From: Hydrolagus colliei
Lineage: Eukaryota
Assembly: GCA_035084275.1 (NCBI GenBank)
Contig: CM068771.1
Span: 620,001-684,000 of the forward strand
Direction: 5' to 3'
Length of the DNA: 64,000 nt
Each line of letters opens with the position of its first letter. Position 1 is the first letter of the stretch. Under the pieces are notes generated by a model that was not told where the DNA came from, did not search any database, and saw only the letters and a program-made list of their open reading frames with translations. Below are positions 33,301-56,600 of this stretch, piece by piece. The translations under genes and the position numbers were made by a program.

Positions 33301-33410
33301 ATGGCTGTGGGGTTGACCACCTTCTGAAAAGATTGATCCACCAAATCTTCAGCCATGTGCTGTGTAGTGTCTCCAGCCTCTCCTCCAGCTCAGAAAGCCT
33401 GAGCTCCAAC

Positions 33411-35850: not shown

Positions 35851-37493
35851 TTTATACATATGTGTTTGTCAATGGTGAACAAAGCATAGTTCCCACAAAG
35901 CTCAGATTGTGTATGCAATCAGTCTCAGCTGCCCTGCCATAGTCCCAGACATGTTCGATATTATTTTATTATAAATTTTATATATTTTATTATTATTCAC
36001 CTCTTTCTACATCTGCACTGAATTCCCACTCAGTTTGCTCCTTACTCTGCTGCTCTCAGTGACTATGTGTGTGCTTTCTTCCATGTCCACCACATTGCCC
36101 ATCTTCACCTATCCCTCAACCTAACAGCTGCTGAAACCCTGGTCTTTGTTACTTCTGACTGGGCTACTCTAACACCCTCCTAGCCAGTCTCCCCTCCTCC
36201 ACCATCCACAAAATTTAACTCATACAAAACTCCATCACCCACATTCTCACCCTCACCAAACTTTGAAACACTATTACCCCAGTCCTCGCCAGACTTCACT
36301 GGCTCCCTGTCACAGAATAGATCGACTTCAACATCCTTACTCTTATGTTTAAATCCCTTTATTCCTCTGCACCTCAATACCTCACTAACCTCCTCTATCC
36401 TAACAGCCGTATCTGCCGCCTCTGTTCTACTGGGTCTGGCCTCCTACTTCAGGCCCGTACGCAGGGGGGGTGCGACGGGTGCGTACGCACGCCCCCCCAA
36501 ATTATAAAAGGTCCACATTTTCCGGGTTAGAGAATTGTATTTTTTATCAAATTTAAACACCAAGTAAAGTAAATTTATTGAGCATTTGTGTAACAATCAG
36601 TTCTTCAAAACTATGTATAAATTATAAACACACATCTTTGAATGTTTTAATATTAATATAAAATTATCGAGTCGCACACCAGAATCGGCGTCTACCCAAA
36701 ACATACCGCGTCGATAGAGGAGTCAATAACGCAGCGAGTCTGTGACTCGTGACTGGATAAACATAGGTGCGCGCCAAGACTCAAATCCTCGTTTGGAAAT
36801 CATCCCGTAAACAGCCACAAGGGTAGCACCACTTCTGGAAGTTAAAATCATCTTTTCATCTGGTCACCGTAAGTAAAAATTGCTCAAGTTTTGAGAGGTG
36901 TGACTGTAATGCTAGCAAACAATGACAACATATTTACAAGCTTCTGAGAAATTAAAGCTTTTGAGAACCCAACAAAAAAGTTATATGCTGGACGGGAATG
37001 CCTATCTTTAAAAGAAATACTCATGGACGTAGACCTATGCTTTAGCGCCTATTCTACGTGGTGTGTCAATCGGAAATCATCCCGTATACAGTCACTACAT
37101 CAAAAGGTAGCACCACTTTGTGGAAGCTGAAATCGTATTTTAATCTGATAAATGTAAGTAAAAATGACTTAAGTTTTGATAGGCGTGTTTCTGAAATATC
37201 ATGTTTCTTGTTTTGTCTTGATTATCACATTTGATTTATATTATTAAAAATGTATTCCTGTAATTAAAAATTGCTTTTAGAGACGTCCATTGGCATGCAA
37301 AAAAAAATGACCGCAAAGATAAACAGTGCTACTTTATTTCACATTCCGTTTTGTACCCAGAGTGAAAAAACATCAATGTCGCACGAATTTGGCATAAAAA
37401 TAGTTTCACCATCATCTGATCGAGCGAACTCGGGCATTGACAACCACACTTCTCCACTGATCCCTTCTCTCCATGCAGCCTGAAAACTCCCGC

Positions 37494-37825
37494 CTGCCAA
37501 TACCCGAATCGCGCTCCAGAGTATCGATGTAGGTTAGGGTCGGTCTACCTCGTGTTCTGTGACCGTGCAATGGTTCCCATAGGATAGTAGCACTATGGAC
37601 AGTTTCCTCCCGGCTTCTCCAGCTATGTCCGCAAAACCTAAGACGCCTCTGCAGTAATGTCTGTGATACCAGTGTGGTAGTGTACCATATAGCTCACTAT
37701 TTGTCAGATGCTGTCGCCAGTAAACGTTCAGGGCGTCTCTTAGAAGCCTGGTATATACCTCATGAGTCACCTAATCTCCTGGTCAAGGTTTGCGTAAGTG
37801 TCCAGCATTCTGCTCCATATAGGAG
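37494..37825 (-). mobile_element. RTE-clade LINE C-terminal fragment inside the hAT element
   Basis: [34 protein letters not shown] and [22 protein letters not shown] motifs across frameshifts. Confidence 0.75.
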
Positions 37826-37945
37826 CGACTTTCAGCACTCGCGTTAATGCACATTCATTATAATATGGAAATCGATATTGGTAGAGTGGTTGACGTATTC
37901 GCTTCAAAGCGACCAAGGCGTCTCGAATATGGAACGCTATTAAAG
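37823..37945 (+). pseudogene. hAT transposase C-terminal remnant
   Basis: [35 protein letters not shown] resembles the RL..LAL..IH....D...V.D.FA...PRR end of Tip100/PRKRIR-type transposases. Confidence 0.75.
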
Positions 37946-38297
37946 AATTTCCCCTCCCTTATTTTTTCAAGTATTTTTTCGTCAGATCAGTATTGCTTGA
38001 TGGGTCACTTCCTTTAATTTTGATTCTAAATAAATAAATAAAAACTAACTACACTATTGCTCACAGTTCAACGATATTTTCAGGATAATGCTGATAACAG
38101 GCTTGTAACACGTGAGAATTAACTGTTTTACACTGATTTTCAGTTTCTGTTTATTTTCTTGTCTTTAATAAAATTTGCTTTGCTGGAATATCTGAGCACA
38201 TAATTCATACTTTACTCTTACATTATTGTTCATTACAGTCCGAAAGAAATTGAGTCTTAGGATAACAATGCAGAACAACTTATTAATTACTGTCAAT

Positions 38298-38551
38298 GGG
38301 ACAGTAATTAATATGCATTGCCTGGAATTAATATGCAATGCCTGGAATGCATTGCCTGAAAAGGTGGTGGAGGCTGATTCGATAACAACTTTTAAAAGGG
38401 AATTAGATCTTTATTTAGGGAGAACGGGTCTATTAGGCTATGGGGAGCGGGCAGGGCAGTGGGATTGAATCGCTGTTTTCAAAGAGCCGGCACAGACTAG
38501 ATGGGCCGAATGGCCTCCTGTTGTGCCGTAAAATTCTATGAATCTATGAAT
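38298..38551 (+). mobile_element. CR1 3' end insertion present only in hAT copy 1
   Basis: WNALPEKVVEADSITTFKRELD motif and attctatgaatctatgaa tail; absent from copy 2. Confidence 0.9.
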
Positions 38552-39299
38552 CTGTAGTTTATGATCATTTTCTCTTTTACGCATCCATTTATCAAGCATT
38601 CGTCATTGTACTGTTTTAATTGGATTGTAATTTACTTTATCGTTCACATTCCGTACATCATCGAGTCAACAATCGTGTTTGCTTTTATCGGCGAACACAT
38701 TCGACCTTCCCAAAAAATTTAGACGCGGACTACCGGGGAAAATAAAAACACTGAATAAATAATGATGCTCTTAAAAACCAAGGGCATGAAACATTTACCG
38801 TTCATATTGGATCTTCTGAACTGATTAAATACGACCTCAAACTGTGTAAAACGTCGGAGCCTCGAGGGGGCTTCGGGGGCAGACCGCAAGCCCCCGGCCA
38901 TTGTTGGTCCCATCACTAGCAATTCGCACCCCTCCATGAAAAATCCTGCGTACGGCCCTGTACTTGTCCCAGCCACTAAATCCCAAAGCTTTGGAAATCC
39001 CTCCCTCACCTTCTTCATAACCGCTGATCGCTCGCTCCTGGGTTTCCTGCGTGCGCACTTTGGCTGCCTCCCAGACCCGATCCACCCCCACCACCCTAAC
39101 ACCTCTTCTCCCATACCCCTCTATCTGCTACTCTCACTCTGTTATTTTCTCCCACTGTCCACCCCCACCTTCACCCCCACTCCCACTCTGCAACTCTTCC
39201 TCTCTGCCCTGCTCTCTCCCCGCGCTCCCTGCCTCCTATCCCCACTCGACCCCCCCCACAGCCTCCCTCTTCTCCAGCCTGGGAATCCTCCGCCAGGCT

Positions 39300-40030
39300 C
39301 ACCGTGGCACTCAGCGTTGGCTGTCCAGCAGCAGCCACACCGAATGCCCCTTTCCCCATCACCCCCTCCAGCCACCACAGACAAAGATCCGCAGGGGCTA
39401 ACCTTTCCTCTCTCATCTCCATCCCCACCACACCTGCCACACAATCCGGTACCCCCTCTCTCCCCACACACCCTTCTGTCAACTCCTCCCACTGCATTGG
39501 CCTCCAAAATGTCCACTCCTTGTGCAATAAGACCTTGGCCATCAACAATTTCAAACTCGATGAGAACGTTGATATCATGGCCCTCACTGAAACCTGGATC
39601 ACCCCAGGGGACACTTTCTCCCTCACAGAGGCCACACCACCTGGCTGTACATCCCACCACATCCCTCGCCCCAACTGCCGCGGCAGTGGCATGGCCCTCA
39701 TCTCTAGAGTGCCACTAGCCCTACCTCCCACTCCTCCAGTTCCTTCCCCTCCAGTGACCTCACCATTTCCCACTCCTCCCATCCCTCCCTCAAAATCCTT
39801 CTCATCTACTGCCCTCCAAAACCCTCCCCAGCCTTCATCTCAGATGTCTCAACTCTACTAGCCTCCCACTGTGCCTCCTCTGATTGCCTCATTATCCTCA
39901 GTGATTTAAATCTGCACTTCACTCCCTCCTGCTCCACCTCCTCAGAATTATCCTCCCTCCTCTCATCTCTCAGCCTCTCACCCCACATCCACTCCACCAC
40001 CCATGTTCATGGCCACCCGCTTGAACTGGT
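39300..40030 (+). mobile_element. L2 endonuclease-domain fragment
   Basis: LQNVHSLCNK...DIMALTETWIT...RGSGMALI and ILSDLN motifs. Confidence 0.85.
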
Positions 40031-40039
40031 GATCACCAG

Positions 40040-40540
40040 TAGATGTGGTATATATAGATTTTAAGAGGACATTTGATAAAGTGCCACACAAAAGGATTTG
40101 GGTGTCCTTGTACACCAGTCTCAAAAAGTTGGTTTGCAGGTGCAGCAAGCAACTAAGAAGGCGAACGGCATGTTAGCGTTCATTTCAAAAGGTTTAGAGT
40201 ATAAATAGGGAAGTCGTGCTGCAACTGGATAGGGCTCTGGTGAGACCGCACCTAGAGTATTGTGTGTAGGTTTGGTCTCCTTATTTAAAAAAGTACATAC
40301 TTGCCTTAGAGGGGCTGCAGCGTAGATTCACTAGGTTAGTTCCTGGGATGAGGGAACTGACCTATGAGGATAGGTTGAATAAACTAGGGCTGTATTCTCT
40401 AGAGTAGAGAAGAATTAGGGGGATCTTATTGAAACATATAAGATTCTTAAAGGGCTAGATAAAGTAAACAGTGAGGGAGTGTTTCCCCTCGTAGGAGAAT
40501 CTATAACCAGGTGTCATAATCTTAAAATTATGGGTCATTC
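40040..40540 (+). mobile_element. CR1 RT/C-terminal fragment
   Basis: [13 protein letters not shown]...LVRPHLEYCV...RRIRGDLIETYKIL motifs. Confidence 0.85.
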
Positions 40541-40863
40541 AACATTGAATCCTGGACGAGGACAAATTTCCTACAGCTCAACGTCAACAAGACAGAGGCC
40601 CTCCTGATTGGCTCGCGTCAGTGCCTCCGTACCTCTGGCGCCGACAACATCAGCGTTTAAGGCTGCTCTCTCCATCTCTCAAAGCCAGTCAGGTATCTCT
40701 CCTTCCCCTTCCAACTATCCCGACCCTCCCCCACCCTGCTCGTGTCCCGAACTAACTGTTCAGCATCTTGAGACGTCCTCCCGATGTAAAGGCGCTATAC
40801 AAGTGTAATTTTGTTGTTATTGTTGGTGTTCATCTCGACCGCTCCGACTGTCTTAAGGTCCTG

Positions 40864-41193
40864 GAGCTCCTGTGGCTCAGTGGTTAGAGCACTTGTCTTG
40901 TCAAGCTGGGGAGACCTGTTTTCGAATCCAGGCAGGTCAGGGCAAAACCTTGGGCAAGTTTCCTTACTACACACACACGCCTAATAATAATCCCTCCCAA
41001 AAAAAACACAATAATAAAATTGGTCATTTCAATCCACGACTGTCTGTGGGGCGCTGCTGTGCGCAATTGGCTGCCGCGATTCGCCCACAAATATATACAG
41101 TCAATTCACTTTACAGTATATTCTGTGAAGCGCTTTGGGATGTCGATAAGATGTGAAAAGCGCTATATCAATTGCAAGGATTATTATTATTAT
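40864..41193 (+). mobile_element. tRNA-derived SINE ending ~70 bp upstream of the beta X box
   Basis: Full head-body-tail structure. Confidence 0.9.
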
Positions 41194-41240
41194 AAGGTCA
41201 CCTTACCCCTTGGTATATAATGCAACTTGTGTGAGAAGGA

Positions 41241-41304
41241 GACGCTGGAGGATTAGGATCTGCCCAGAAACTGGTGATGCAGCGTCCAGAGCTGCTCATT
41301 GGTG
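41241..41304 (+). promoter_or_regulatory. Class II beta proximal promoter: X1 (41263-41276 CCCAGAAACTGGTG), X2 TGATGCA, Y (CTCATTGGTG 41295-41304)
   Basis: Resembles HLA-DRB X1X2 (CCAGCAACTGATGATGC) with an inverted CCAAT 18 bp downstream. Confidence 0.85.
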
Positions 41305-41588
41305 CCTTTGAGAGACACTTCACCTCCCACAGCAGCTCAGACACTGGACTCCAGCTCACACACAGACTCAGGACTGAGTCTATCTCACCCACAGACACAG
41401 GACTGAGTCCAGCTCACACACAGCCTGTAACAGGTACACACACAACCTGTAACAGACACAGCCTGTAACACACACACAGCCTGTATCACACACACACACA
41501 GCCTGTATCACACACACACACAGCCTGTATCACACACACACACAGCCTGTAGCAGACACAGAGCCACAGCCTGTAATAGGGATCGGTG

Positions 41589-41682
41589 ATGTCTCTCTCT
41601 GTCGCTCTGTCTCCGGCACTCCGCCTCCTGCTCCTCTTCTCCACCATCAGTGTCTTAATTCCAGAGCAGAACATCCTGGCTG
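41589..41682 (+). CDS. MHCIIB: Class II beta exon 1 (leader [31 protein letters not shown])
   Basis: First ATG after the X-Y promoter; hydrophobic leader; G|gtgagt donor in phase with exon 2. Too short to appear in the ORF track. Confidence 0.85.
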
Positions 41683-44600
41683 GTGAGTAACGGGGAGACG
41701 GCTCCGGGGGTGGGGGGGAGTGGGGGGGAGACCACAACACTGAGACCCTGACACTGAGACTGACTGATAATGAGACACTGACACTGAGACCCAGACAGTG
41801 ATTGACATTGAGCCGGGAAGCCTGATCCCAGATTGTGGGGGAAACAGGGAGGAGAGAGGAGAGGCTGACAGTAACTTACAGGGCGGCCAGTCTGGTGTTA
41901 CTGTGAGGAACAGGCAAGTGAGATGCTGGGAAATACTGGCCAGTTCCTCTGACTTTGTTTGTGGGTAAATGTTTGGAGGCAATACTGAGGGACAAGGTTA
42001 GTGAGGATTTAGGTAATAGTTTAATGTGTACAAGAACAGGCGTCGCTGTGAACACTCAGCAGGTCAGGCAGCATCTACGGAGAATGGAAAAGTGAGTCAA
42101 CGTTTTGGGTCCACGATCATTTGTCAGAGTTATGAGAGTTCTTTGAGGCAATCAGTAAACCTCTGGTAAAGGCAATGCTGGCGATGGTAGGTGGGGATAT
42201 CCAGTTATTTGATGAGGTGCCTCACAGAAGCCTCATACACTGAGGGCATTTGGAGTAGAAGGACAGGTAGTGGTTTGGACAGAAAGCTGGTTGAAGGACA
42301 GGAAGCAGAGAGGGTAACAGATGTGTTTTCCGTTGGCAGAAGGTATTTAGTGGCCTGGCACAAAATCTGTGTTGGGGTCTCTCCTTTCCTCGGTGTAAAT
42401 CAATCACCTCAACCTAGATACAGGAGGTTCAGTATATTGTGAGTCTTCGCTGTGGGCAGGAAGATGGTGGCAATGCTCTCACACATTTCATGCTGAGCTG
42501 TGTTGACCACAAGAAAACTCACAGGGGTTCCTGTTTCTGAGGATTCAGCTAGTGAGGCTCAAACCCACAAATTGAGCTGCATTACAACCCTGCAGAACCT
42601 GTCCAGAGCAAAGGTCATAGAATCATAGAACTCTCTCCCTCCTTTTTCTCTCTCCCTCTTTTTATTTCTCTCTCTCCCCCTCTCCTCCCTTCCTCTCTAT
42701 CTCTCCCTCTCTATTTCTCCCTCTCTATCTCTCCCTTCCTCTCTCTCTTTCTTTTTTCCCCTCTCTCTGATGGATACTATGTATTGCCTGTGTAGCCTGA
42801 CTGTATCGTGGGTTTATACACTGTTTTGGTCGGGGGTGGGGTGGGAGAAGGAGAGAGAGGCAGGGAGATGGAGGGTGGTGGGGAAAGAGAGGGAAAGGGG
42901 TGGGGGGAAGAGAGAGGAGTGCGAGGTGGAGAGAGAGGTGGGGGAGAGGAGGGGAGAGAAAGAGGGGGTGAGTTGATTAATTTAGTTGGAAAATCAGAGG
43001 AGTGGAGGGGGATTGGGTTTGGAGCCATTCAGATGCCAGACTGACTTGAGTGTGTGCGTGAAAGGGAGAGAGAGAGAGAGAGAGCGAAGGAGGGTGAGAG
43101 AGAAAGAAAGAAAAGAGGGAAAACCGACAGTGCCGCTTTAAGAGGAAAAAACTTCCTTCCGCCATTGTAGAAATTTGCTTTGTGATTTGTGCTGTGTTTA
43201 TATACAGTAATCAATATTTATTGCCTTTATTGGTAAGTACCCATATAATATTCTGTTATTATTTAATCTATTATTAATATGGTATGTTTAAAAATAAGTT
43301 ATTTTTTTTGTGTTGGGTTATCGACAACTTGCCACCAGAATATCCTGCATGCTGTTTAACCAGCATTGTCTAGATCCCGAGGTGCCAAATAAATGGGCTT
43401 TTACTGTAGATCACAAACATATCATAGAATCATAGAATCTTACAGCACAAAAGGAGGCCATTCAGCCCATCAAGTCTGTGCCGGCTCTTTAAAAAGAGCA
43501 ATTTAATCCCACTCCCCAGCTCTCTCCCCATAACTGTGGAAACCCGTCCTCCCCAAATAAATGTCTACCACTCTTTTAAAAATTGTTATCGAATTGGTCT
43601 CCATCACCTTTTCAGGCAATGCATTAGTGATTCGAACAAATCGCTGAATGAAAATAATTCTCCTCATCTCCCCTCTGCTTCTATTGTAAATTTGTGACCA
43701 CAAGTCACTGATACACCAACCAGTGGAAACATTTTTTTCTTATTAACTCTGTCGAATCCCCTCATGATCTTAAAACCCTCAATTTGGTCTCCTCGTAACC
43801 TCTGTTCCAATAAGAATAAACCTAGCCTCTCTAGCCTTTCCTCATAACTGAAGTCCCTCATTCCTGGTACCATCCTAGTAAATCTCCTATGCAACCTTTC
43901 CAATGCCTTAACATCCTTCCTAAAGTGTGGTGACCAGAATTGTACACAGTACTAGAGCTGAGGCCTAAACAAAGTTTTACAGAATTCAGTGAGGACTTCC
44001 TGACTTTTGTACACTATGCCCCAATTTATAACTCTATTTGTACTCTATGCCCCTATTTCCCTCCAGTTAGAAAAACATCTCTTTACCACCATACTTTGCT
44101 TTCTGTCTTTCAGCCAGTTCTGTAACCACGCTGCCACTATTCCCTTAACACTGTGGGCTTCAATTTTGTTTACAAGTCTTATGTCAGATATCTTTTGAAA
44201 ATCCATAAAAATAATAATAATAATCCTTGCATTTATATAGTGTTTAGCATGTCTTCTAAACATCTCAAAGCACTTCAAAGATTATACTGTAAAGTGAACT
44301 GACTGTCGAAATGCAGCAGTCAATTGTGCTCAGCAGTATCCACGCAACGAGTCATGGATTGAAATGGTCAATTTACTATTTTTTTTTAAGGATTATCATC
44401 ACATGTGTGGAGTAAGTAAACTTGCACAAGGTTCCACCTTGGCTGGAATTGAACCCAGGACTTTCGATTTTAAGGCAACCATTGACTTCAATTATTATTA
44501 TTATTTCTCAGTATTAGATCCAGCACTGCTTCTTTCCTGATTGAGCTGGAAACATACTGTTCTAGTATGATCCTGCACACATTTCAGGAATCCTTTCCAT

Positions 44601-47600
44601 TCCTTACCCTTTACGCTGTTATGTTGCCAGTTTATGTTAGAATAATTGAAGTACCACATTATTGGTACTACTCTATTGGTTTTGCAACTTTCTGAAATTT
44701 GCTTGCAGATTTGCTCATCTATCTCCTTCCCACTGCTTGGTTGACTTCAGTGTTTACTCGTTGCATTGCTGTTTATTCTCGCAGCCCACTGTGTAACTTG
44801 TTTGTCCTCTCTGAAGCTACATCCCAATTCCCTTCCTACCTTGATATTTGTTGAAACCCTTCCCCACAGCACCAATTCATCTCCCTGTGAGCACATAGGT
44901 CCCAGCCATGTTCAGGTGTAACCCATCCACCTTGTGCAGGTCCCACCTGCCCCAGGACGAGTCGCAATGCTCCAGGAACCCGAAGCCCTCCTTTCTGCAG
45001 CATCATCTTTTGATTCGACTGTAGATATTCACTTATACAAGGCATTGGGAGTAACCCACAGATTGCACCTTCGAGATCCTGCTTTTTGGTTTTCACTCTA
45101 GTTTGTGATACTCTCCCTGTAGCATATCAGCCCTTTTTTCCTCCCTATGTCATGGTTTCTAATATTGACCACACCTTAGAATCATAGAATCAAAGAATTT
45201 TAAGGCACAAAAGGAGGCCATTCGGCCCATCCAGTCTTTGAAAAGAGCAATTCAATCTCACTGCCCAGCTCTCTCCCAATAACCTAACAGACCTGTTCTA
45301 CCTAATTAAAGCTCTAATTCTCTTTTAAAAACTGTTATCGATTCAGCCTCCAGCACCTTTTCAGACAATGCATTCCAGATTCGAACAACCCGCTGAGTGA
45401 AAACATATCCCCTCTGCTCCCCTCTGCTTCGTTTTGAAACTGACCACGAGTCACAGATTCGCCCACCAGTGAAACAGTTTTTCCTTATTCACCCTGTCGA
45501 ATCGACTCATGATTTTATAAACCTGTTAGGTCTCATCTCAACCTTCTCTGTTCTAGAGAGAATAAACCTAGCCTATCTAGCTTTTCCTCTGAACTGAAGG
45601 CTCTCAGTCCTGGTACGATTCTAGTAAACCTTCTTTGTACACTTTCCAATGCTTAACATTATTTCTATAGTGTACAGAATTGAACACAGTATTCCAGCTG
45701 AGGCCTAACCAAAGTTTTATAGCGGTTAGTCAGCACTTCCTGACTTTTGTACTCTGTACCCCTGTTTATGAAGCCTAGTATCCCATATGCCTTCTCCACG
45801 GCTTTGTCTACCTGTCCTGCCACCTTCAAGGAGTCACTAACACAAATCCCCGGTTTCTCTGTTCCTTCATACACTTTAAAATTGTACTATCTAGCCTATA
45901 TTGCCTTCCCTGATTTCTTCTCCCAAAATGTATCACCTCACACATCTTTGCATTAAATTTCATCTGCCATGTCTCTGCCCACTTTACCATTTTATCTATA
46001 TCTTCTTGCAGATGGTTACTATCCTCCTCACTATTTACTATTCTCTCTAACTTCATACCATCTGCAAACTTGGAAACTGTGCTCCCTACATCCACTGCTC
46101 TTTTTAATATATATTAAAAAGAGCAGTGGTCCCAAAACCGATCCCTGGGAGATGCCACTGCACACTTCCCTCCAGTCTGTAAAACAGCCGCTCACCACAA
46201 CTCTCTGCTTTCTGTCTCGCAGCCAGTTGTGGATCCATGATGCCACTGTACTTTTAACGCTGTGGGTCTCTACTTTCCATAAGCCTCCCATGCGGCACTT
46301 TGTCAAATGACTTTGAAAAGTCCATGTAAACTGCATCAACTGCGCTACCCTCGTCCACCCATTCCGTTACCTCATCAAAAATTCTATCAGATTTTTAAGG
46401 CAAGATTTGCCTTTAACAAATCCATGCTTGCTGTCCTTTATTAGCCTATATCTTTCTAAGTGAAGATCTATCTTGTCCCTCATTATAGTCTCTAGAAGTT
46501 CTTGTAAAAGGCTGATGCAAAAGATTAGGGCCCATGGAATTAAGCGCAATATATTAGCATGGACAGAAGAGTGGCTAACAGGAAGAAAACAGAGAGTCGT
46601 GATAAAAGAGTCCTTCTCAGATTGGTAGGATGTGATTAGTGGAGTGCCACAAGGATCAGTGCTTGGCCTCAACAATTTTACAATATATATCAATGATCTA
46701 GACCCGGACATAGAACTTAAAATATTTAAAATCACGAATGACTCAAAGCTAGGTGGGATAGTAAGCTCCAAGGATGACACTAGAAAAGTGCAACTTGATA
46801 AGATTATAGGCTAAGTGAGTAGGCAAGACAATAACAACAACAAAATTACATTTCACGTCGGGTGGACATCACAAGGTGCTGAACAGTCAGGACGGGACCC
46901 AAGTAAGGGAGAGGGGCAGGATAGAGGGGAGTGGGCGAGTTTGGAGGGCAGCAGAAGGAACGGTCGAAGAGGAAGGTGGCAGGTGGAATATAAGGTGTGG
47001 AGGTGTGAAATTCTTCACCTAAGTAATAAAAAACAAAAAGCAGATTATTTTCTAGAGGGGGAGAGGCTAGAATAGTGTTAGCATTCTGAGGGATTTGGCT
47101 GTCCTTGTACACCAGTCACCAAAAGTTGATATGGAAGTACAGCAAGCAACTCGGAAGGCTAATGGGATGTTGGCGTTCATTGCAAAAGGGTTAGAATATA
47201 AGAGTAGGCAAGTCTTACTACAACTGTATAGGGCATTGGTGAGACCACACAATATTCTTATTGTGTGCAGTTTTGGTCTCCTTATCTAAGAAAGGATATA
47301 CTTGTCTTAGATTCAGCATATGCATGCAGCATAGATTCACTAGGTTAGTTCCTGGGATGAGGGGGTTGAGCTATAAGGATAGGTTGAGTAAACTCGGCTT
47401 ATATTATCTAGAATATAGAAATATTAGAGGTGATCTTGTAGAAACATGTAAGATTCTTGAGGGGCACGACCCAGTAGAGAATGGGAGATTGTTTCCCCTT
47501 GTTGGAGGAACTATAACTTGGGGTCACAGTCTTGAGAGTAAGAGTCAGCCTTTTCGAATAGAGTTGAAGAAACACTTCTTCACTCAGAGGGTAGTGAATT

Positions 47601-50600
47601 TGTGGAATTCTCCACTCCAGAAGGCTGCAGATGCTCAGTCCTTGAACATATTTGAAACTGAGATTGATAGATTTCGTAAAGGTAGAGAGATTTAGGGATA
47701 TGGGGATAAGAACGGCAGATGGAATTAGGTTAGAAGGTCAGCCATCTAATTGAATAGTGCGATAGGCTCTAGGGGCCATAGTCTACTCCTGGTCCTAATT
47801 CCTATAAAACATAAGAATAATAATATAATAATCCTTGCTTTTATATAGCACTTTTCACGTCTTCTAGACTAATCTCAAAGCCCTTCACAGAATATACTGC
47901 AAAGTGAATTGATGGTATTTTATTATGGGCAAAATTGTGCACTGGAGAGTTCTACAAATGGACTTGGATTTAAATGACCAATTTCTGATTGTTTATTTAC
48001 TTGAGGGACTATTATCAGATGTGTGGGTAAGGAAACATGTTCAAGGTTTTGCCATGAGGGGAGTCAAACCAGGGTCTCTCATTGGTAAAGTGAGTGCTCT
48101 AACCACAGAGCAATGCCATATATTCCAGTGTCATATGCTTCAATATATGAAGTGTTGGTGGGATACATGGAATTCTCAGTTTGGTTTGGATAATGGTAGT
48201 GTGTCAGGTACCCGGCTGGCCAAAACAAATTTGTTAGCGCTTTACTGAATATATTGGGACAGAAAGAGAGTGATTGGCTGTGTGTGAGAGTGAGAGAGTC
48301 TGGCTGCGCATGTGGAGAGAGTGACTGGCTCTGTGCGTGTGAGAGAGAAAGTGACTGGCTGTGTGTGTTTGTGTGTGAGAGAGAGAGTGACTATGTGAGT
48401 GTGAGAGAGACTGGTTGTGCATATGATAGAATCACTGGCTGTCTATGAGAGAGTCTCTGGATGTGTGTGTGAGAGAGTCTCTGGTTGTGTGTGTGATAGA
48501 GAGTGACTGGCTACGTGTGTGAGAGAGAGAGAGAGAGAGAGAGTGACTGGCTGTGTGCAATACCTCACCCCAAAAGCCACTGAAACTTTGGTCCAGACCT
48601 TCGTCACCTCATGACTGGACTATTCAAATGCCCTCCTCTCCGGATCCCTTCCACCACAATCCATAAAATCCAACTAATCCAAAACTCTACCGCCCACATT
48701 CTCACCCGCTCTAAGCTTCGCTCCCCCATTACCCCAGTCCTTGCCAGACTTCACTGGCTCCCTGTCCTAGAGAGAATCAACTTCAAGATCCTCACCCTTG
48801 TTTTCAAATCCCTCCACTCCTCTGCACCCCCCTACCTCTCCGACCTCCTCTCTCCTCAAACCAGTTCCCATTGCCTTCGCTCCTCTGGGTCTGGCCTCCT
48901 CCGTGTCCCTCCGAATCCTCCGCTCCACCCTCGGCGGCCGTGCCTTCAGCCACTACACCCCGAGGCTCTGGAACTCCCTTCCTCACTCCCTTCCCCTCAT
49001 CCCGTCTCTCCCCAGTTTCAGGTCACAGCTGAAGACCTTCCTCTTCGACTGCACTGCCAGGCTCCGTAATTATCCGTAATTATCTTACCCCCCGCGCTGC
49101 CGAAACACTCGTGCATGCATACATCACCTCACGGCTGGACTACGGAAATTCTCTCCTAGTAGGCCTCCCCAGTTCCTCCATTCATAGGCTGCAGGCCATC
49201 CAAAACTCTGCAGCCCGTGTACTATCCCGCACCCGCCTCCGCGACCACATAACCCAGGGCCGTACGCAGGATTTTTAATGGGGGGGTGCGAATTGCTAGT
49301 GATGGGACCAACAATGGCCGGCGGCTTGCGGTCTGCCCCCGAAGCCCCCTCGAGGCTCCAACGTTTTACACAGTTTGAGGTCTTATTTAATCAGTTCAGA
49401 AGATCCAATATGAACGGTAAATGTTTCATGCCCTTGGGTTTTTAAGAGCATCATTATTTATTCAGTGTTTTTATTTTCCCCGGTAGTCCGCGTCTAAATT
49501 TTTTGGGAAGGTCGAATGTGTTCGCCGATAAAAGCAAACACGATTGTTGACTCGATGATGTACGGAATGTGAACGATAAAGTAAATTACAATCCAATTAA
49601 AACAGTACAATGACGAATGCTTGATAAATGGATGCGTATAAGAGAAAATGATCATAAACTACAGATTGACAGTAATTAATAAGTTGTTCTGCATTGTTAT
49701 CCTAAGACTCAATTTCGTTCGGACTGTAATGAACAATAATGTAAGAGTAAAGTATGAATTATGTGCTCATATATTCCAGCAAAGCAAATTTTACAAAAGA
49801 CAAGAAAATAAACAGAAACTGAAAATCAGTGTAAAACAGTTAATTCTCACGTGTTACAAGCCTGTTATCAGCATTATCCTGAAAATATCGTTGAACTGTG
49901 AGCAATAGTGTAGTTAGTTTTTATTTATTTATTTAGAATCAAAATTAAAGGAAGTGACCCATCAAGCAATACTGATCTGACGAAAAAATACTTGAAAAAA
50001 TAAGGGAGGGGAAATTCTTTAATAGCGTTCCATATTCGAGACGCCTTGGTCGCTTTGAAGCGAATACGTCAACCACTCTACCAATATCGATTTCCATATT
50101 ATAATGAATGTGCATTAACGCGAGTGCTGAAAGTCGCTCCTATATGGAGCAGAATGCTGGACACTTACGCAAACCTTGACCAGGAGATTAGGTGACTCAT
50201 GAGGTTCTATGATTCTATGATTCTATGATTCTATGAGGTATATACATGAGGTATATGTATATGAGGTATATACCAGGCTTCTAAGAGACGCCCTGAACGT
50301 TTACTGGCGACAGCATCTGACAAATAGTGAGCTATATGGTACACTACCACACTGGTATCACAGACATTACTGCAGAGGCGTCTTAGGTTTTGCGGACATA
50401 GCTGGAGAAGCCGGGAGGAAACTGTCCATAGTGCTACTATCCTATGGGAACCATTGCACGGTCACAGAACACGAGGTAGACCGACCCTAACCTGCATCGA
50501 TACTCTGGAGCGCGATTCGGGTATTGGCAGACGAGAGTTTTCAGGCTGCATGGAGAGAAGGGATCGGTGGAGAAATGTGGTTGTCAATGCCCGAGTTCGC

Positions 50601-53600
50601 TCGATCAGATGATGGTGAAACTTTTTTTATGCCAAATTCGTGCGACATTGATGTTTTTTCACTCTGGGTACAAAACTGAATGTGAAATAAAGTAGCACTG
50701 TTTATCTTTGCGGTCATTTTTTTTTGCATGCCAATGGACGTCTCTAAAAGCAATTTTTAATTACAGGAATACATTTTTAATAATATAAATCAAATGTGAT
50801 AATCAAGACAAAACAAGAAACATGATATTTCAGAAACACGCCTATCAAAACTTAAGTCATTTTTACTTACATTTATCAGATTAAAATACGATTTCAGCTT
50901 CCACAAAGTGGTGCTACCTTTTGATGTAGTGACTGTATACGGGATGATTTCCGATTGACACACCACGTAGAATAGGCGCTAAAGCATAGGTCTACGTCCA
51001 TGAGTATTTCTTTTAAAGATAGGCATTCCCGTCCAGCATATAACTTTTTTGTTGGGTTCTCAAAAGCTTTAATTTCTCAGAAGCTTGTAAATATGTTGTC
51101 ATTGTTTGCTAGCATTACAGTCACACCTCTCAAAACTTGAGCAATTTTTACTTACGGTGACCAGATGAAAAGATGATTTTAACTTCCAGAAGTGGTGCTA
51201 CCCTTGTGGCTGTTTACGGGATGATTTCCACACGAGGATTTGAGTCTTGGCGCGCACCTATGTTTATCCAGTCACGAGTCACAGACTCGCCGCGTTATTG
51301 ACTCCTCTATCGACGCGGTATGTTTTGGGTAGACGCCGATTCTGGTGTGCGACTCGATAATTTTATATTAATATTAAAACATTCAAAGATGTGTGTTTAT
51401 AATTTATACATAGTTTTGAAGAACTGATTGTTACACAAATGCTCAATAAATTTACTTTACTTGGTGTTTAAATTTGATAAAAAATACAATTCTCTAACCC
51501 GGAAAATGTGGACCTTTTATAATTTGGGGGGGCGTGCGTACGCACCCGTCGCACCCCCCCTGCGTACGGGCCTGAAGTAGGAGGCCAGACCCAGTAGAAC
51601 AGAGGCGGCAGATACGGCTGTTAGGATAGAGGAGGTTAGTGAGGTATTGAGGTGCAGAGGAATAAAGGGATTTAAACATAAGAGTAAGGATGTTGAAGTC
51701 GATCTATTCTGTGACAGGGAGCCAGTGAAGTCTGGCGAGGACTGGGGTAATAGTGTTTCAAAGTTTGGTGAGGGTGAGAATGTGGGTGATGGAGTTTTGT
51801 ATGAGTTAAATTTCTGCTAACTGTGTGTGAATCAGAAAGAATCTCTGGCTGTGTGTGTGTGTGGAGAGTGGATGGTTCTGTGTGTATGTGAGAGAGAGAG
51901 AGAGACTGGCTGTGTTTGAGAGACTGGTTGAGAGTGAAAGAGAGAGGCTGTGTGTCTCTTTCTGTGTGTGGGTGTGAGAGTGAGAAAGAGAGAGAGCTAG
52001 CGTGACTGACTGTGTGAGAGACTGAGACTGTGTGAGAGAAAGTGATAGCGTGACTGGCTGTGTGTGTCAGACAGTCAATGTATATGTGGTAGTGAGTGTG
52101 TGAGCTTGTGTGTCAGAGTGTGGGGTAACAAGAGTGTGAGTGTCAGTGTCAGACTCACAGTCAGTGATGTCCTGTTTCCCCACAGACGCTGATTCAAATA
52201 TACGCAGAGCTGGCTGTGAGTTTAACAGCACCGGCACCTGGACCTATGTTGATCAGTACATCTTCAACAAGCAAGTGATCTATTACTTTGACTTTAATCA
52301 GAGGAAATACATCGGCCTCAAGGATTGGATCCAAAGTAACGTGGAGAGATTCAACAAGGAGATCGCTGAGGGGGTGTACGAGCAGGCAATCACAATGTGT
52401 GACAACAATGTACAGATTAACCTACAGGTGCTGACCCGACACGGTGAGTATCCACATGGGGGGGGAGTGTGAGGGGGGGGGGGGAGTGTGTGTGTGGGGG
52501 GAGGGGAGAGTGTGTGGGGGAGGGGAGAGTGTGTGGGGGAGGGGAGAGTGTGTGGGGGAGGGGAGAGTGTGTGGGGGAGGGGAGAGTGTGACCGTGGGGG
52601 AGGGGAGAGTGTGTGTGGGGGGGGGAGGGGAGTGTGTGGGGGGGGGGGGAGAGTGTGTGTTGGGGGGGGGGAGAGTGTGTGTGTGGGGGGGGAGAGTGTG
52701 TGTGGGGGGGGGGGAGAGTGTGTGTGGGGGGGGGGGAGAGTGTGTGTGGGGGGGGGAGAGTGTGTGTGGGGGGGGGGATAGTGTGTGTGGGGGGGGGAGA
52801 GTGTGTGTGGGGGGGGGAGGGGAGTGTGTGTGGGGGGGGGGAGAGTGTCTGTTGGGGGGGGGGAGAGTGTGTGTGTGGGGGGGGAGAGTGTGTGTGGGGG
52901 GGGGGGAGAGTGTGTGTGGGGGGGGGGAGAGTGTGTGTGGGGGGGGGAGAGTGTGTGTGGGGGGGGGAGAGTGTGTGTGGGGGGGGGAGAGTGTGTGTGG
53001 GGGGGGGGAGAGTGTGTGTGGGGGGGGGGAAGAGTGTGGGGGGGGAGTGTGAGGGGAGGGGGAAGAGTGTGTGTGGGGGGGGGGGAGAGTGTGTGTGGGG
53101 GGGGAGAGTGTGTGTGTGGGGGGGAGGGGAGAGTGTGTGGGGGGGAGGGGAGAGTGTGTGGGGGGAGGGGAGAGAGTGTGTGGGGGGGGAGGGGAGAGTG
53201 TGTGTGGGGGGGGGGGAGGGGAGAGTGTGTGGGGGGGGGGAGAGTGTGTGGGGGGGGGGAGGGAAGAGTGTGTGTGTGTGTGTGGGGGAGAGTGTGTGGC
53301 GGGGGGAGAGTGTGTGGGGTGGGAGGGGAGAGTGTGTTGTGGGGGGGAGGGGAGGGTGTGTGTGGGGGGGAGGGGAGCATGTGTGTGTGGTGGGAGGGGG
53401 TGTGTGTGTGGGAGGGTAGTTGAGAGTTTGTTTTGGGGGGCGAGGGGAGAATGTGTGTGGGGGAGAGTGTGGGGGTGAGGGGAGAGTGTGTGTGAGGGGG
53501 GAGGGGAGAATGTGTGTGTGTGGAGGGGGAGGGGAGCGTGTGTGTGTGGGGGGAGGGGAGAATGTGTGTGTGTGGAGGGGGAGGGGAGCGTGTGTGGGGG

Positions 53601-56600
53601 GGGGAGTGGATCTTGTGTGGGGGGGATGGAGCATCTTTGGGGGGGAGGGGAGAGTGTGTGTGGGGGGGAGCATGTATGTGGTGGGGGAGGAGTGTGTGGG
53701 GGGGAGGGGAGAGTGTGTGGGGAGTGGTGAGGGGAGAGTGTGTGGGGGTGGAGGGGGAGAGCATGTGGGCGAGAGGGGAGAGTGTGTGGGTGGGGAGGGG
53801 GAGGGGAGAGTGTGTGGGTGGGGAGGGGGAGGGGAGAGTGTGTGGGGGGCAGGGGAGAGTGTGTTTCAGGAAGGGGAGTGTGTGTGTTGGGGGGAGGGGA
53901 GAGTGTGTGTGGGGGGGTGGAAGGGAGCATGTGTGTGTGGTGGGAGGGGGGTGTGTGTGGGAGGGGAGTGGAGAGTGTTGTGGGGGGGGAGGGGAGAGTG
54001 TTTGGGGGCAGAGTGTGTGCGTGTGGGGGGGAGGGGAGAGTGTTTGTGGGGGGGGGGAGGGGAGCGTGTGTGTGGTGGGGGAGGGGAGAGTGTGTGGGGA
54101 GGTGAGGGAAGAGTGTGTGGTGGGAGTTGAGAGTTTTTGTGGGATGGGAGGGGAACGTGTGTGGGTAAGGGGGAGAGTCTGTCTGGGCGGAGGGGAGGGA
54201 CGAGAGCGTGTGATGCGGAGGGGAGAGTGTGTAGGGGGAGGGAAGTGAGTGTGTGGGGGGTTGGGAGACTGTGGGGGGGAGCGGAGAGTGTGGGTGGTGG
54301 GTGGGGTGGGGGGGATTGAGGGGAGAGGTCTGGTTGGAGGGGAGGGAGGAGAGAGTGTGTGTGGGGAGGAGAGAGTGTGTGGGGGAGGGGCGAGAGGGTA
54401 TGGGGAGAGAAAGTGTGTTCGGGTTGTGAATCGGGGTGGGAGTATGTTTGTGGAGGCGTGGAATCTCCCCACCTTCTGGCCTGCTCCATGTTCCCAGCCC
54501 GACCCATATTCCCCTGCCATTGGCGGCCAGGCTTTCAGCCTCTCTGCCCCCACACTCTGGAACTCCATCCCACAGTCCCTTCGCCTCAGTCCCTCCCTCG
54601 CCTCCTTCAAGGCCGGTCTCAGGACCCTCGTCTTCAACTCTCTCCCAGCCCTCCCAACTCTCTCCCTCTCTCTCCCGTACCCTTCCACTCTCCCTTGCTT
54701 GGGTCCCGACCTGACTGTTCACCCCTATCCTGAAGAAACCCTCCCTTGATGCGTCGCAACCATCAAGTTATCGACCTATCTCCAACCTCCCGTTTCTATC
54801 CAAGGTCCTTGAAAGAGTGTTTGCCTCCCAGCTCCGCTCTTTCCTTTCAACTCACTCACGTTTTGTACCCCTCCAATCAGGTTTCCGCCCTATCCACAGC
54901 ACAGAACCTGCCCTGGTTAAGGTCACAAATGACATCCTAACCGCCTGTGACCAGGGCTCCCTCTGCCTCCTCGTCCTCCTTGACCTGTCTGCTGCGTTCG
55001 ACACAGTCGATCACACCATCCTCCTTCAACTTCTTTCCTCCCACCTCAACCTTCAAGGCACAGTCCTTGACTGGTTCCATTCTTATTTGACCCATCATTT
55101 ACATTTTGTTTCTTCCAATGGTTTTTCTTGAAACCCACGCACAGTTTCTCACGGCGTTCCTCAGGGCTCTGTTTTAGGCCCCCTCCTTTTCACCCTTTAC
55201 ACGCTCCCTCTGGGCGACGTCATCCGCAAACATGGGGTAAATTTCCACATGTATGCGGACGACACCCAATTGTACCTTTCTGCCTCATCCCTCAACCCCC
55301 AGACGATCGATGTTCTGACAGCATGTCTGTCCGACATCGAGTCGTGGATGAGGGACAACTTTTTGCAATTGAACGTGAGTAAGACCGAGGCCCTCCTGAT
55401 TGGCTCAAGCCAGCGCCTCCGCACATCGGGCGCTGCCAGTCTCAACATCCAAGGCTGCACTCTCCACCTCACAAAGCCAATCAGGAACCTCGGCATCATG
55501 TTCGATCAAAAACTTTCCTTCCTCCCCCACATCCGCGCCTTGACCGGCACCGCTTATTTCCACCTGCGCAACATTGCCAGGCTCCGCAACTATTTTACCC
55601 CCCGCGCTGCCGAAACACTCGTGCACGCATACATCACCTCACGGCTGGACTACGGAAACTCTCTCCTCGTCGGCCTCCCCAGTTCCTCCATTCACAGGCT
55701 GCAGGTCATCCAAAACTCTGCAGCCCGTGTACTATCCAACACCCGCCTCCGCGACCACATAACCCCCACCCTTGCCCGTCTCCACTGGCTCCCCATCCTC
55801 CAGAGGATCGAGTTCAAGATCCTCGTCCTCACCTACAAGGCCTTACACGGCCTTGCCACGCGCTATTTAACCGATCTACTATCCCCCTACACGCCCACCC
55901 GGACCCTCCGTTCAACAGGACTTGGCCTGCTCCAAGCCCCCCGCCCGAACCGTCCCACCATCGGAGGCCGGGCCTTCAGTTTCTCCGCTCCCACCCTATG
56001 GAATGCCATCCCTCAATCCCTCCGTTTTGTTTCTTCCCTTTCCTCTTTCAAGGCCGGTTTGAAGACTTTCCTCTTCGATCGTGCCTTTTGTTCCACCCCG
56101 AACTCTTTTACCTCCACTTCGTGTTTCACCCCTTCCCAAACAGTCCCCTCTCAGCTCGGGTCACACGCCTCCTGTGCAGCACCTTGGGACGTCCTCCCGA
56201 CGTGAAAGGCGCTCTATAAATGTAATATTGTTTTTTTTTATTGTTCTCACTCCCCCAATCTCAACCCAACTAGACTGCCCACCCGCCAAAGAAATTCCCT
56301 GATCCCTGACTTGTGTTCTCTTCCAGTGAAGCCCAAGGTGACAATCCGGCCAAAGGAGACAGCCCACACAGGGCACCTGCTGACCTGTTATGTGACGGGC
56401 TTTTACCCGGAGGAGATCAAGGTGACCTGGAGGAGCAATGGCCAGGCAGTGTCTGCGGACAAGGTGTCCACCACCCGGATGGCTAACGGAGACTGGACCT
56501 ACCAGGTGCACAAGGTCCTGCAGTACGACCCTGCGTCCGGGGACCAATACAGCTGCCACGTTCAGCACCAGAGCCTGGACAGCGACATCGATCATCCCTG

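What the first reader, a model, noticed from the sequence alone, without database searches (positions are those of the whole stretch)
36211..51813. Near-identical 2.6-kb inverted repeats flank the beta promoter and exon 1: a potentially invertible segment
36211-38960 and 49255-51813 are inverted copies (~98% by eye). The 10.3 kb between them holds the beta X-Y promoter and leader exon, while exons 2-6 lie outside. Recombination between the arms would point the promoter away from exons 2-6, switching the gene off without changing coding sequence, and could be reversed. Each arm has its own private insertion, which argues against a simple assembly repeat. The order is interleaved with the direct pair: A, IR1, exon 1, B, IR2. 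No recombinase is evident, so programmed switching is speculation; an inversion polymorphism is the simpler expectation.
Basis: partly seen in the sequence, partly recalled or inferred. Interest (0 to 1): 0.7.

Follow-up and report, generated by a model that had tools for sequence, protein, structure and literature searches.

The report
Transposon-derived inverted repeats bracket MHC-IIβ exon 1
Two nearly identical, oppositely oriented copies of a small DNA transposon (plus 239 bp of its neighbouring sequence) sit either side of the promoter and first exon of a cartilaginous-fish MHC class II beta gene, which makes the segment a plausible but unproven substrate for an accidental gene-killing inversion, not a programmed switch.

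Summary
Arms 36211-38960 and 49255-51813 are inverted copies: 2,496 aligned bp, 19 mismatches (99.24%), and two private indels. The 10,294 bp between them holds an X1-X2-Y class II promoter (41263-41302) and the leader exon (41589-41682). Exons 2-6 (52186-59058) lie outside. The six exons splice into an intact 266-aa class II beta chain, 69% identical to Callorhinchus milii IIB.

New here: each arm is a non-autonomous TIR DNA transposon plus 239 bp of the L2-type LINE it inserted into. The TIRs are 16 nt (CAGGSCCGTACGCAGG). Arm 1 has a 5-bp target-site duplication, TACTT. The inner IR boundary is exactly a TIR tip. Arm 1 is parental. Arm 2 lies in intron 1 and is a derived copy with no duplication of its own.

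Both private indels carry CR1-LINE tail repeats, so the arms have separate histories. Differences between arms are clustered (P about 2e-4), which suggests gene conversion.

No recombinase or transposase is encoded in the window. The assembled orientation is the ancestral, functional one.

Best reading: a passive inverted low-copy repeat, an NAHR substrate like human F8 int1h or HsInv0114. Inversion would make a null allele. Whether it ever happens cannot be told from one haplotype.

The parts
36211..38960 (+). IR arm 1 (parental copy), 2,750 bp: 239 bp of host L2-type LINE plus the TIR element
   Evidence: L2 homology from at least 10 other copies runs across the 36211 boundary.
49255..51813 (-). 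IR arm 2 (derived copy), 2,559 bp, entirely inside beta intron 1; ends 373 bp before exon 2
   Evidence: No alignment crosses 51813 or 49255.
36450..38960 (+). Non-autonomous TIR DNA transposon, copy 1. TIRs at 36450-36465 and 38945-38960 (CAGGSCCGTACGCAGG, 15/16 nt). 5-bp target-site duplication TACTT at 36445-36449 and 38961-38965.
   Evidence: An uninterrupted L2-type paralogue at 48560-49030 reads CCTCC-TCCGT-GTCCC at the same site. The TIR occurs as exactly 4 perfect hits in the window, against 0.39 matches expected by chance at up to 3 mismatches.
49255..51574 (-). TIR element, copy 2. TIRs at 49255-49270 and 51559-51574, both intact. No target-site duplication of its own (TAACC vs CTGCT).
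51575..51813 (-). Copy of the 239-bp L2 flank (equals 36211-36449, 100% identical) carried along with the element, including the TACTT
   Evidence: 522-bp perfect tract from 36211
36072..36449 (+). Host L2-type LINE 3' region interrupted by the element; it resumes at 38966 to about 39046
38295..38548 (+). Arm 1 private insertion: 5'-truncated CR1-like LINE 3' end ending in (ATTCTATGA)n. It is 77-83% identical to four other CR1 ends in the window.
50206..50267 (+). Arm 2 private insertion: (TTCTATGA)4, the CR1 tail octamer, plus extra copies of the adjoining 13-mer ATGAGGTATATAC
38961..49254 (.). 10,294-bp spacer that an arm-to-arm crossover would invert
41263..41302 (+). Class II X1-X2-Y promoter module: CCCAGAAACTGGTG ATGCAGCGTCC ...GCTCATTGG
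41589..41682 (+). Beta exon 1 (leader), phase 1, donor GTGAGT
52186..52443 (+). Beta exon 2 (beta-1 domain)
56327..56602 (+). Beta exon 3 (beta-2, Ig C1-set)
57121..57237 (+). Beta exon 4 (connecting peptide and transmembrane)
58299..58328 (+). Beta exon 5
59033..59058 (+). Beta exon 6, coding part with stop
49073..49254 (+). L2 fragment truncated on its 3' side exactly where arm 2 begins (94% identical to family copies); marks the target of the arm 2 event
30675..32968 (+). Direct repeat A (partner B is 42872-45177, 90%), a mosaic of SINE, CR1 tail and CR1 EN pieces in the same order; an older dispersed duplication
42872..45177 (+). Direct repeat B

Best explanation
The two arms are a young inverted low-copy repeat that arose from a mobile element; they are not a dedicated switch. 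SHOWN: a roughly 2.26-kb non-autonomous DNA transposon (16-nt TIRs, 5-bp target-site duplication) inserted into an L2-type LINE about 2.3 kb upstream of the class II beta promoter. A second copy, in the opposite orientation, lies in intron 1. It carries the whole element plus 239 bp of the first copy's left flank, ends exactly at the TIR tip on the other side, truncates an older L2 fragment, and has no target-site duplication. Arm 1 is therefore the parent and arm 2 the derivative. After that, a CR1 LINE tail inserted independently into each arm. The beta gene is intact and the assembled orientation is the ancestral one. INFERRED: the most economical origin has two steps. First, ordinary transposition of a copy into the L2 fragment in intron 1. 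Second, a break at the new copy's left end repaired by copying from arm 1 through the TIR into 239 bp of flank, followed by end-joining that deleted the rest of the target L2. Since then the arms have exchanged sequence by gene conversion, seen as clustered differences. INFERRED CONSEQUENCE: perfect tracts of 553, 522 and 410 bp, 10.3 kb apart, make the pair a substrate for non-allelic homologous recombination. A crossover would invert 38961-49254, placing the promoter and leader on the minus strand (exon 1 at 46342-46435) and leaving exons 2-6 without a promoter or signal peptide. That is a null allele that arises, and can revert, sporadically in the germ line, as in human F8 intron-1 inversion. 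I expect it to be rare and deleterious rather than regulated.
For: IR anatomy. TIRs, target-site duplication and empty-site paralogue. L2 homology crosses the arm 1 boundary but not the arm 2 boundary. Arm 2 abuts a 3'-truncated L2 fragment of ordinary family divergence (94%). The private indels are CR1-tail events. Clustered mismatches: the three longest identical alignment tracts cover 1,711 of 2,496 bp (one of them, 636 bp, is split by the arm 2 indel into uninterrupted runs of 233 and 410 bp), P=1.6e-4, variance P=0.005 over 100,000 permutations. The outer 522 bp has no difference at all, while the last 129 bp at the inner end has 5. The gene is intact, with canonical splice sites and 266 aa. 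No recombinase or transposase domain in 30 ORF translations, and no Rfam family in the arms. Precedents: HsInv0114 has 2.7/2.7-kb 'TEs/SDs' IRs and a 14.7-kb inversion validated as polymorphic; 22 predicted IR-mediated human inversions had IRs of 1.6-24 kb, 17 were validated, and 11 of the 16 that could be analysed showed signs of recurrence (PMC3961182). F8 Inv1 arises by NAHR between int1h-1 in intron 1 and an inverted copy outside the gene (PMC7507428).
Against: Only one haplotype is available, so no inverted allele, no hybrid arm and no population frequency can be shown. The origin of arm 2 is not resolved: there is no target-site duplication and no microhomology at the outer junction. Mismatch clustering could partly reflect uneven mutation rate (7 of 19 differences are in CpG context), and the statistic was chosen after seeing the data. 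No reads were available to exclude a misassembly. The element's superfamily and any transposase source are unknown.
Confidence: 0.72

Rival explanations
1. One-step segmental duplication by replication template switching or end-joining (FoSTeS/MMBIR-type) that happened to copy 36211-38960 in inverted orientation into intron 1. On this reading the coincidence with the TIR tip is chance and the transposon played no role.
For: Arm 2 has no target-site duplication and sits in a patchwork of truncated fragments: the L2-type paralogue at 48560-49030 is truncated at its 3' end, and the L2 fragment at 49073-49254 is truncated at both ends. The target lost at least about 480 bp of L2. The outer breakpoint lies at an arbitrary place inside an L2 element.
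Against: The inner boundary falls exactly on the last base of the TIR. With the other boundary 239 bp out, a hit at 0 bp has a chance of order 1%. Mismatch density is strongly uneven, which a single-age copy does not predict.
Confidence: 0.15
2. Programmed invertible promoter switch: a dedicated recombinase flips the promoter and exon 1 segment to turn the beta gene on and off in somatic or germ cells.
For: The geometry alone (promoter inside, coding exons outside). Short inverted 16-nt TIRs face each other across the spacer at 38945-38960 and 49255-49270.
Against: No recombinase or transposase domain in the window. The arms are accidental products of transposon and LINE history, with independent CR1 insertions. 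The repeat is young (0.76% divergence), so it is not a conserved feature of class II genes. To my knowledge no vertebrate gene is regulated in this way apart from RAG-mediated inversional joining, and the termini here begin CAG, not the CAC required of RSS and Transib ends (PMC1131882).
Confidence: 0.02
3. Assembly artefact: one arm is a false inverted duplication created by the assembler.
For: MHC regions are heterozygous and repeat-rich, and no reads could be examined.
Against: The arms differ by 19 substitutions and by two independent CR1-tail insertions. They are separated by 10.3 kb of unique sequence containing a needed exon. The window has no gaps. Each arm has a biologically coherent junction: a target-site duplication and host L2 continuity at arm 1, and a truncated L2 at arm 2.
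Confidence: 0.05
4. Two fully independent insertions of the same mobile element, with no duplication of host DNA.
For: Both copies have both TIRs intact.
Against: The copies share 239 bp of host L2 sequence beyond the left TIR at 100% identity, in the orientation expected for a copy of the arm 1 locus and not for the L2 fragment at the arm 2 site. Arm 2 lacks a target-site duplication.
Confidence: 0.04

Closest known systems
Human F8 intron-1 inversion (int1h-1 / int1h-2)
   Same: One repeat copy lies in intron 1 and one inverted copy lies outside the 5' end of the gene. NAHR between them separates the promoter and exon 1 from the remaining exons and gives a null allele that arises recurrently (PMC7507428).
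   Different: int1h is about 1 kb (my own knowledge) and its copies are about 126 kb apart. Here the arms are about 2.5 kb and 10.3 kb apart. In F8 the inversion has been observed in patients; here it is only predicted.
[quoted passage not shown] HsInv0114
   Same: Nearly the same dimensions: IRs of 2.7/2.7 kb classed 'TEs/SDs', with a 14.7-kb inversion validated as polymorphic. This class shows frequent recurrence (PMC3961182).
   Different: Different lineage (a cartilaginous fish). The inverted state here would break an essential immune gene, so it should be selected against rather than drift to appreciable frequency.
Alternative transposition of Ac/Ds in maize (rearrangements made by ends of two nearby elements)
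   Same: Two copies of a TIR element close together on one chromosome. In maize such pairs generate inversions, deletions and duplications whose breakpoints lie exactly at element termini (PMC8225341 and PMC3744419, listed). Here one IR boundary is exactly a TIR tip.
   Different: No transposase source is known here. The element is not a hAT: its target-site duplication is 5 bp, not 8 bp. No rearrangement product has been observed beyond the duplication itself.
Bacterial invertible promoter switches (fimS, Hin/Gin) and composite transposons
   Same: Inverted repeats bracket a promoter that reads out into a gene, and two inverted element copies bracket cargo.
   Different: No site-specific recombinase. 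The arms are kilobase-sized and accidental. There is no target-site duplication around the composite. Resemblance of geometry only.

Membership tests
NAHR-prone inverted low-copy repeats flanking a gene segment (F8 int1h / HsInv type) | Two copies in inverted orientation on the same DNA molecule | tested here: met
NAHR-prone inverted low-copy repeats flanking a gene segment (F8 int1h / HsInv type) | Length of at least about 1 kb and identity of at least about 97%, with long perfect tracts | tested here: met
   2,496 bp at 99.24%; perfect tracts of 553, 522 and 410 bp. PMC3961182 defines highly identical IRs as at least 1 kb and at least 97%.
NAHR-prone inverted low-copy repeats flanking a gene segment (F8 int1h / HsInv type) | Both orientations exist among chromosomes, with the exchange point inside the repeats | not testable with these tools
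   Only one haplotype is available, and there is no eukaryotic read or genome collection. The assembled state is ancestral (the TACTT and host L2 remain next to arm 1).
NAHR-prone inverted low-copy repeats flanking a gene segment (F8 int1h / HsInv type) | Signs of ectopic exchange (gene conversion) between copies | tested here: inconclusive
   The differences are significantly clustered (P=1.6e-4), but mutation-rate heterogeneity is not excluded.
Cut-and-paste TIR DNA transposon (class II element) | Terminal inverted repeats at both ends | tested here: met
   16 nt, 15/16 matching, at the ends of both copies; 4 perfect hits in the window, against 0.39 matches expected by chance at up to 3 mismatches
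Cut-and-paste TIR DNA transposon (class II element) | Target-site duplication, confirmed against an empty site | tested here: met
   TACTT on both sides of copy 1. A paralogous L2 reads through uninterrupted. Not met for copy 2.
Cut-and-paste TIR DNA transposon (class II element) | Encodes a transposase (autonomous element) | tested here: not met
   No long ORF and no Pfam hit in the arms, so the element is non-autonomous
Transib / RAG-like superfamily | 5-bp target-site duplication | tested here: met
   As of 2005, 5 bp was described as unique to Transib among eukaryotic DNA transposons (PMC1131882).
Transib / RAG-like superfamily | Termini begin 5'-CAC (heptamer CACAATG / CACAGTG) with a spaced A-rich nonamer | tested here: not met
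   The termini are CAGGSCC.... The third base is G, which PMC1131882 says is the hAT condition. The element is therefore not filed as Transib.
hAT superfamily | 8-bp target-site duplication | tested here: not met
   The left 8 bp are TCCTACTT and the right 8 bp are TACTTGTC; only 5 bp are duplicated.
Site-specific invertible promoter switch | Dedicated recombinase encoded nearby | tested here: not met
   30 ORF translations scanned against Pfam: only RVT_1, Exo_endo_phos, C1-set and MHC_II_alpha at meaningful scores
Site-specific invertible promoter switch | Promoter inside the invertible segment, target coding sequence outside | tested here: met
Composite transposon | Target-site duplication flanking the whole composite | tested here: not met
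   The sequence beyond arm 2's outer TIR is the copied L2 flank (AAGTA..., the reverse complement of arm 1's flank), not a direct TACTT.
MHC class II beta chain gene | Leader, beta-1, Ig C1-set beta-2, transmembrane and cytoplasmic exons with phase-1 junctions and an open frame | tested here: met
   Six exons, 801 nt, 266 aa, 69% identical to Callorhinchus IIB. C1-set E 2.4e-24. The beta-1 exon alone did not reach Pfam MHC_II_beta at E<=0.01.

The most novel reading that the evidence does not exclude
The promoter and leader exon of this class II beta gene are bracketed by two copies of a recently mobile TIR transposon, both with intact ends. If a transposase of this family is still active elsewhere in the genome, or if NAHR toggling is frequent, the locus could cycle between expressed and silent haplotypes, or lose or move its promoter cassette. 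That would give a reversible presence/absence expression polymorphism of an MHC class II gene in a chimaera-like fish, visible to selection.
Probability: 0.06. Interest if true: 0.75.

Novelty: new member of a known kind. Interest (0 to 1): 0.3.

Why it matters
If the inversion really segregates, it would be a structural null, and possibly a revertible one, of an MHC class II beta gene in one of the oldest jawed-vertebrate lineages. SNP-based surveys would not see it. It would also be a clean non-mammalian counterpart of the F8 intron-1 inversion. As it stands, the value is more modest. The locus is a fully dissected example of how a transposon copy plus ectopic repair can build a kilobase inverted repeat around a promoter. 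It also identifies an unclassified TIR element whose termini start CAG, as in hAT elements, but which makes a 5-bp target-site duplication, as in Transib. That element was active recently enough to leave 99% identical copies.

Tried and rejected
1. A larger, older palindrome. The L2 copies at 33407-35243 (-) and 54719-56238 (+) mirror each other outside the arms at 92.6%. A third copy at 21303-23131 is equally similar (91-94%), the 5' truncation points differ, and there is no inverted copy of exon 2. These are independent LINE insertions.

2. Arms as a LINE retrocopy with 3' transduction. This was suggested by a LINE ORF2 C-terminal-like ORF at 37415-37693 (-). I rejected it once the TIRs and target-site duplication were found; there is also no LINE tail at 51813.

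3. Inversion by staggered breaks with flanking inverted duplications. Rejected because arm 1's inner junction still has its TACTT and the continuation of its host L2 in direct order.

4. The 182-bp L2 fragment next to arm 2 as a templated filler copied at the same time. It is only 90-94% identical to any L2 copy in the window, so it is an old resident.

5. A 12.2-kb tandem unit linking A/B with the L2 pair 36190/48645. The intervals between them share no homology.

6. Rfam and tRNA scans found nothing in the arms, only SINE heads elsewhere.

7. The interior of the element matches nothing else in the window, so family size could not be judged.

8. No public eukaryotic genome or read set was searchable. 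The window's own beta protein is not in the protein collection (best hit 68%), so orientation in other individuals or species could not be checked.
Full report
CONTEXT. The window has no N. It is a repeat-rich MHC class II region of a cartilaginous fish. With the spliced beta-1/beta-2/TM product as query, the best database relative is Callorhinchus milii 'MHC class IIB antigen' at 68% identity, followed by shark class II beta chains at 50-56%. The window's own protein is not in the collection. There is one alpha gene on the + strand (alpha-1 15327-15638, alpha-2 about 19185-19466, TM 24564-24812; Pfam MHC_II_alpha and C1-set). There is one beta gene on the + strand.

THE BETA GENE. Exon boundaries were read directly from the sequence and checked by splicing in silico. 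The exons are 41589-41682, 52186-52443, 56327-56602, 57121-57237, 58299-58328 and 59033-59058. All acceptors are AG and all donors start GT. The junctions of exons 1-4 are phase 1. The CDS is 801 nt and encodes 266 aa with a single terminal stop. It is 69% identical over its whole length to the Callorhinchus protein. The leader alone is 77% identical (E 8e-8). About 290 bp upstream of the ATG lies CCCAGAAACTGGTG-ATGCAGCGTCC-(10 nt)-ATTGG, an X1-X2-Y arrangement. Intron 1 is 10.5 kb long.

THE OBSERVATION. It is correct. Arms 36211-38960 and 49255-51813 are inverted copies. A global alignment gives 2,496 aligned columns, 19 mismatches (99.24%) and two indels, with sharp boundaries. The spacer is 10,294 bp and contains the promoter and exon 1. 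Arm 1 ends 2,303 bp before the X box. Arm 2 lies wholly in intron 1 and ends 373 bp before exon 2. The direct pair A/B (30675-32968 / 42872-45177, 90%) is interleaved as described.

WHAT THE ARMS ARE. At least ten L2-type LINE 3' regions elsewhere in the window align straight across arm 1's outer boundary at 36211. No alignment crosses arm 2's outer boundary at 51813, where the flank is a TG-rich minisatellite. So the outer boundary is an arbitrary point inside a resident L2-type element, and arm 1 is the parental locus.

Aligning that L2 with its paralogues shows it is interrupted between 36449 and 38966. The interrupting DNA begins CAGGCCCGTACGCAGG (36450-36465) and ends with the reverse complement CAGGGCCGTACGCAGG (38945-38960). 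It is flanked by TACTT on both sides (36445-36449 and 38961-38965). The uninterrupted paralogue at 48560-49030 reads CCTCC-TCCGT-GTCCC at this site. The 16-mer occurs exactly four times as a perfect match in 64 kb, once at each end of each copy, against 0.39 matches expected by chance at up to 3 mismatches.

The repeat unit is therefore a TIR DNA transposon with a 5-bp target-site duplication, plus 239 bp of its left flank. The inner boundary of the inverted repeat is the very last base of the right TIR. The element has no long ORF and no Pfam match, so it is non-autonomous. Its interior matches nothing else in the window.

Its family is unresolved. A 5-bp duplication was described as the hallmark of Transib, but Transib and RSS termini invariably start CAC, whereas a G at the third position is the hAT condition (PMC1131882). 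hAT elements make 8-bp duplications (my own knowledge), which is not the case here.

ARM 2 AND THE ORIGIN OF THE REPEAT. Arm 2 has both TIRs intact but no target-site duplication (TAACC vs CTGCT). On its inner side it abuts a 182-bp L2 fragment (49073-49254). That fragment is 94% identical to the family copies, so it is an old resident rather than a co-copied filler, and it is cut off on its 3' side exactly at the TIR tip. LINEs are normally truncated at the 5' end (established knowledge), so the 3' part was lost in the event.

Standard transposition cannot carry 239 bp of donor flank. A random segmental duplication would hit the TIR tip exactly with a chance of order 1%. The most economical account, which is inference, has two steps. 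First, ordinary transposition of a copy into the L2 fragment. Second, repair of a break at the new copy's left end, using arm 1 as template and running through the TIR into the flank, followed by end-joining with loss of the remaining target sequence.

The distribution of differences fits this model. The outer 522 bp are identical, while the last 129 bp at the inner end carry 5 differences. Overall the differences are clustered. In aligned columns the three longest identical tracts are 636, 553 and 522 bp and cover 1,711 of 2,496 bp (P = 1.6e-4; variance of tract lengths P = 0.005). The 636-bp tract is split by the arm 2 indel into uninterrupted runs of 233 and 410 bp. Seven of the 19 differences are in CpG context, and the statistic was chosen after seeing the data, so I call gene conversion suggested, not shown.

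THE PRIVATE INSERTIONS. Arm 1 carries a 254-bp 5'-truncated CR1-like LINE 3' end (38295-38548). It ends in ATTCTATGAATCTATG and is 77-83% identical to four other CR1 ends in the window. Arm 2 carries 62 bp made of (TTCTATGA)4, the same tail octamer, plus extra copies of the adjoining 13-mer. Each arm has therefore been hit independently since the duplication. Together with the 19 substitutions, the coherent junctions and the absence of gaps, this makes an assembly artefact unlikely, although reads were not available.

IS IT A SWITCH? Thirty ORF translations were scanned against Pfam: 25 of the 38 non-low-complexity stop-free segments of at least 100 aa, plus shorter translations from the arms and the A/B repeats. 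Apart from one sub-threshold chance match (PSS, E 0.0096), they gave only LINE reverse transcriptase or endonuclease domains and MHC/Ig domains. Rfam found only tRNA-like SINE heads outside the arms. The repeat is young and assembled from mobile-element accidents. Nothing supports programmed inversion.

What the structure does provide is a good substrate for non-allelic homologous recombination: perfect tracts of 553, 522 and 410 bp, 10.3 kb apart. In humans, 17 of 22 predicted inversions mediated by IRs of 1.6-24 kb were validated, and 11 of the 16 that could be analysed showed signs of recurrence. One of them, HsInv0114, has 2.7-kb 'TEs/SDs' repeats and a 14.7-kb inversion, almost the same dimensions as here (PMC3961182).

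The closest functional analogue is the F8 intron-1 inversion. NAHR between int1h-1 in intron 1 and an inverted copy outside the gene detaches the promoter and exon 1 and causes 1-5% of severe haemophilia A (PMC7507428). Here a crossover would put exon 1 at 46342-46435 and the X-Y module at 46722-46761 on the minus strand, leaving exons 2-6 without a promoter or leader. Arm 1 still abuts its own TACTT and the rest of its host L2, so the assembled haplotype has undergone zero (or an even number of) inversions. It is the ancestral, functional state.

VERDICT. The feature is a new member of a known kind, an inverted low-copy repeat of transposon origin around a promoter and first exon. Interest is moderate to low. 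It would rise sharply only if both orientations were found in animals.

Noticed in passing
4745-4935 (+) and 62520-62715 (-): Two further class II-type X1-X2-Y modules (CCCAGTAACAGGTGAC[G/C]AG...GCTCATTGG) with a GGGACTTTCC kB-like motif. They share a core of about 190 bp at about 95% identity in inverted orientation, and homology collapses outside it. The one at 4.77 kb is placed to be the alpha promoter. The one at 62.69 kb points into the window but has no class II exon downstream of it (only one alpha and one beta gene in the window), so it is an orphan SXY module or the promoter of something else.
   Followed up: partly
52458-54405: A G-rich minisatellite of about 1.95 kb (21-22-bp unit, about 90 copies) starts 15 bp after the exon 2 donor and fills much of beta intron 2. 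Similar TG/GA-rich arrays lie at 48315-48529 and 51814-52166, either side of the block that contains arm 2.
   Followed up: no
41415-41576: About 7.7 copies of a 22-bp unit (CACACACAGCCTGTA...) lie between the Y box and the beta start codon, i.e. in the proximal promoter or 5' UTR. Length variation here could affect expression.
   Followed up: no
21303-23131 (+), 33407-35243 (-), 54719-56238 (+): Three copies of one young L2-type LINE family (RVT_1 domains, 91-94% identical to each other, different 5' truncation points). The second and third form another inverted pair (1.5 kb, 92.6%) that brackets arm 1, exon 1, arm 2 and exon 2. This is a weaker second-tier recombination substrate.
   Followed up: partly
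30675-32968 and 42872-45177: Direct pair A/B (90%, longest perfect tract 241 bp) is a mosaic of SINE, CR1-tail and CR1-endonuclease pieces in the same order, so it is a dispersed segmental duplication. Recombination between A and B would delete arm 1, the promoter and exon 1.
   Followed up: partly
38282-38312: At the 5' junction of the CR1 insertion in arm 1, the target sequence ATTAATTACTGTC is followed 5 nt later by its reverse complement GACAGTAATTAAT. This is a small inverted duplication of the kind left by hairpin or twin-priming events.
   Followed up: no
1008-1079, 8585-8656, 13402-13486 (also 40868-41191, 47820-48111): tRNA(Val)-like heads of a SINE family (Rfam tRNA hits of 31-42 bits; ARAGORN tRNA-Val TAC). 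One copy lies about 70 bp upstream of the beta X-Y module.
   Followed up: no
52186-52443: The beta-1 exon translation does not reach Pfam MHC_II_beta at E<=0.01. The Callorhinchus relative carries PF00969 in its precomputed domains, but the shark relatives do not. The peptide-binding domain of this lineage is divergent from the Pfam model.
   Followed up: no
36466-36505: Just inside the left TIR there is a G7...C7 palindromic stretch (GGGGGGGTGCGACGGGTGCGTACGCACGCCCCCCC) that could form a subterminal hairpin. The right end shares only GGGGTGCGA.
   Followed up: no
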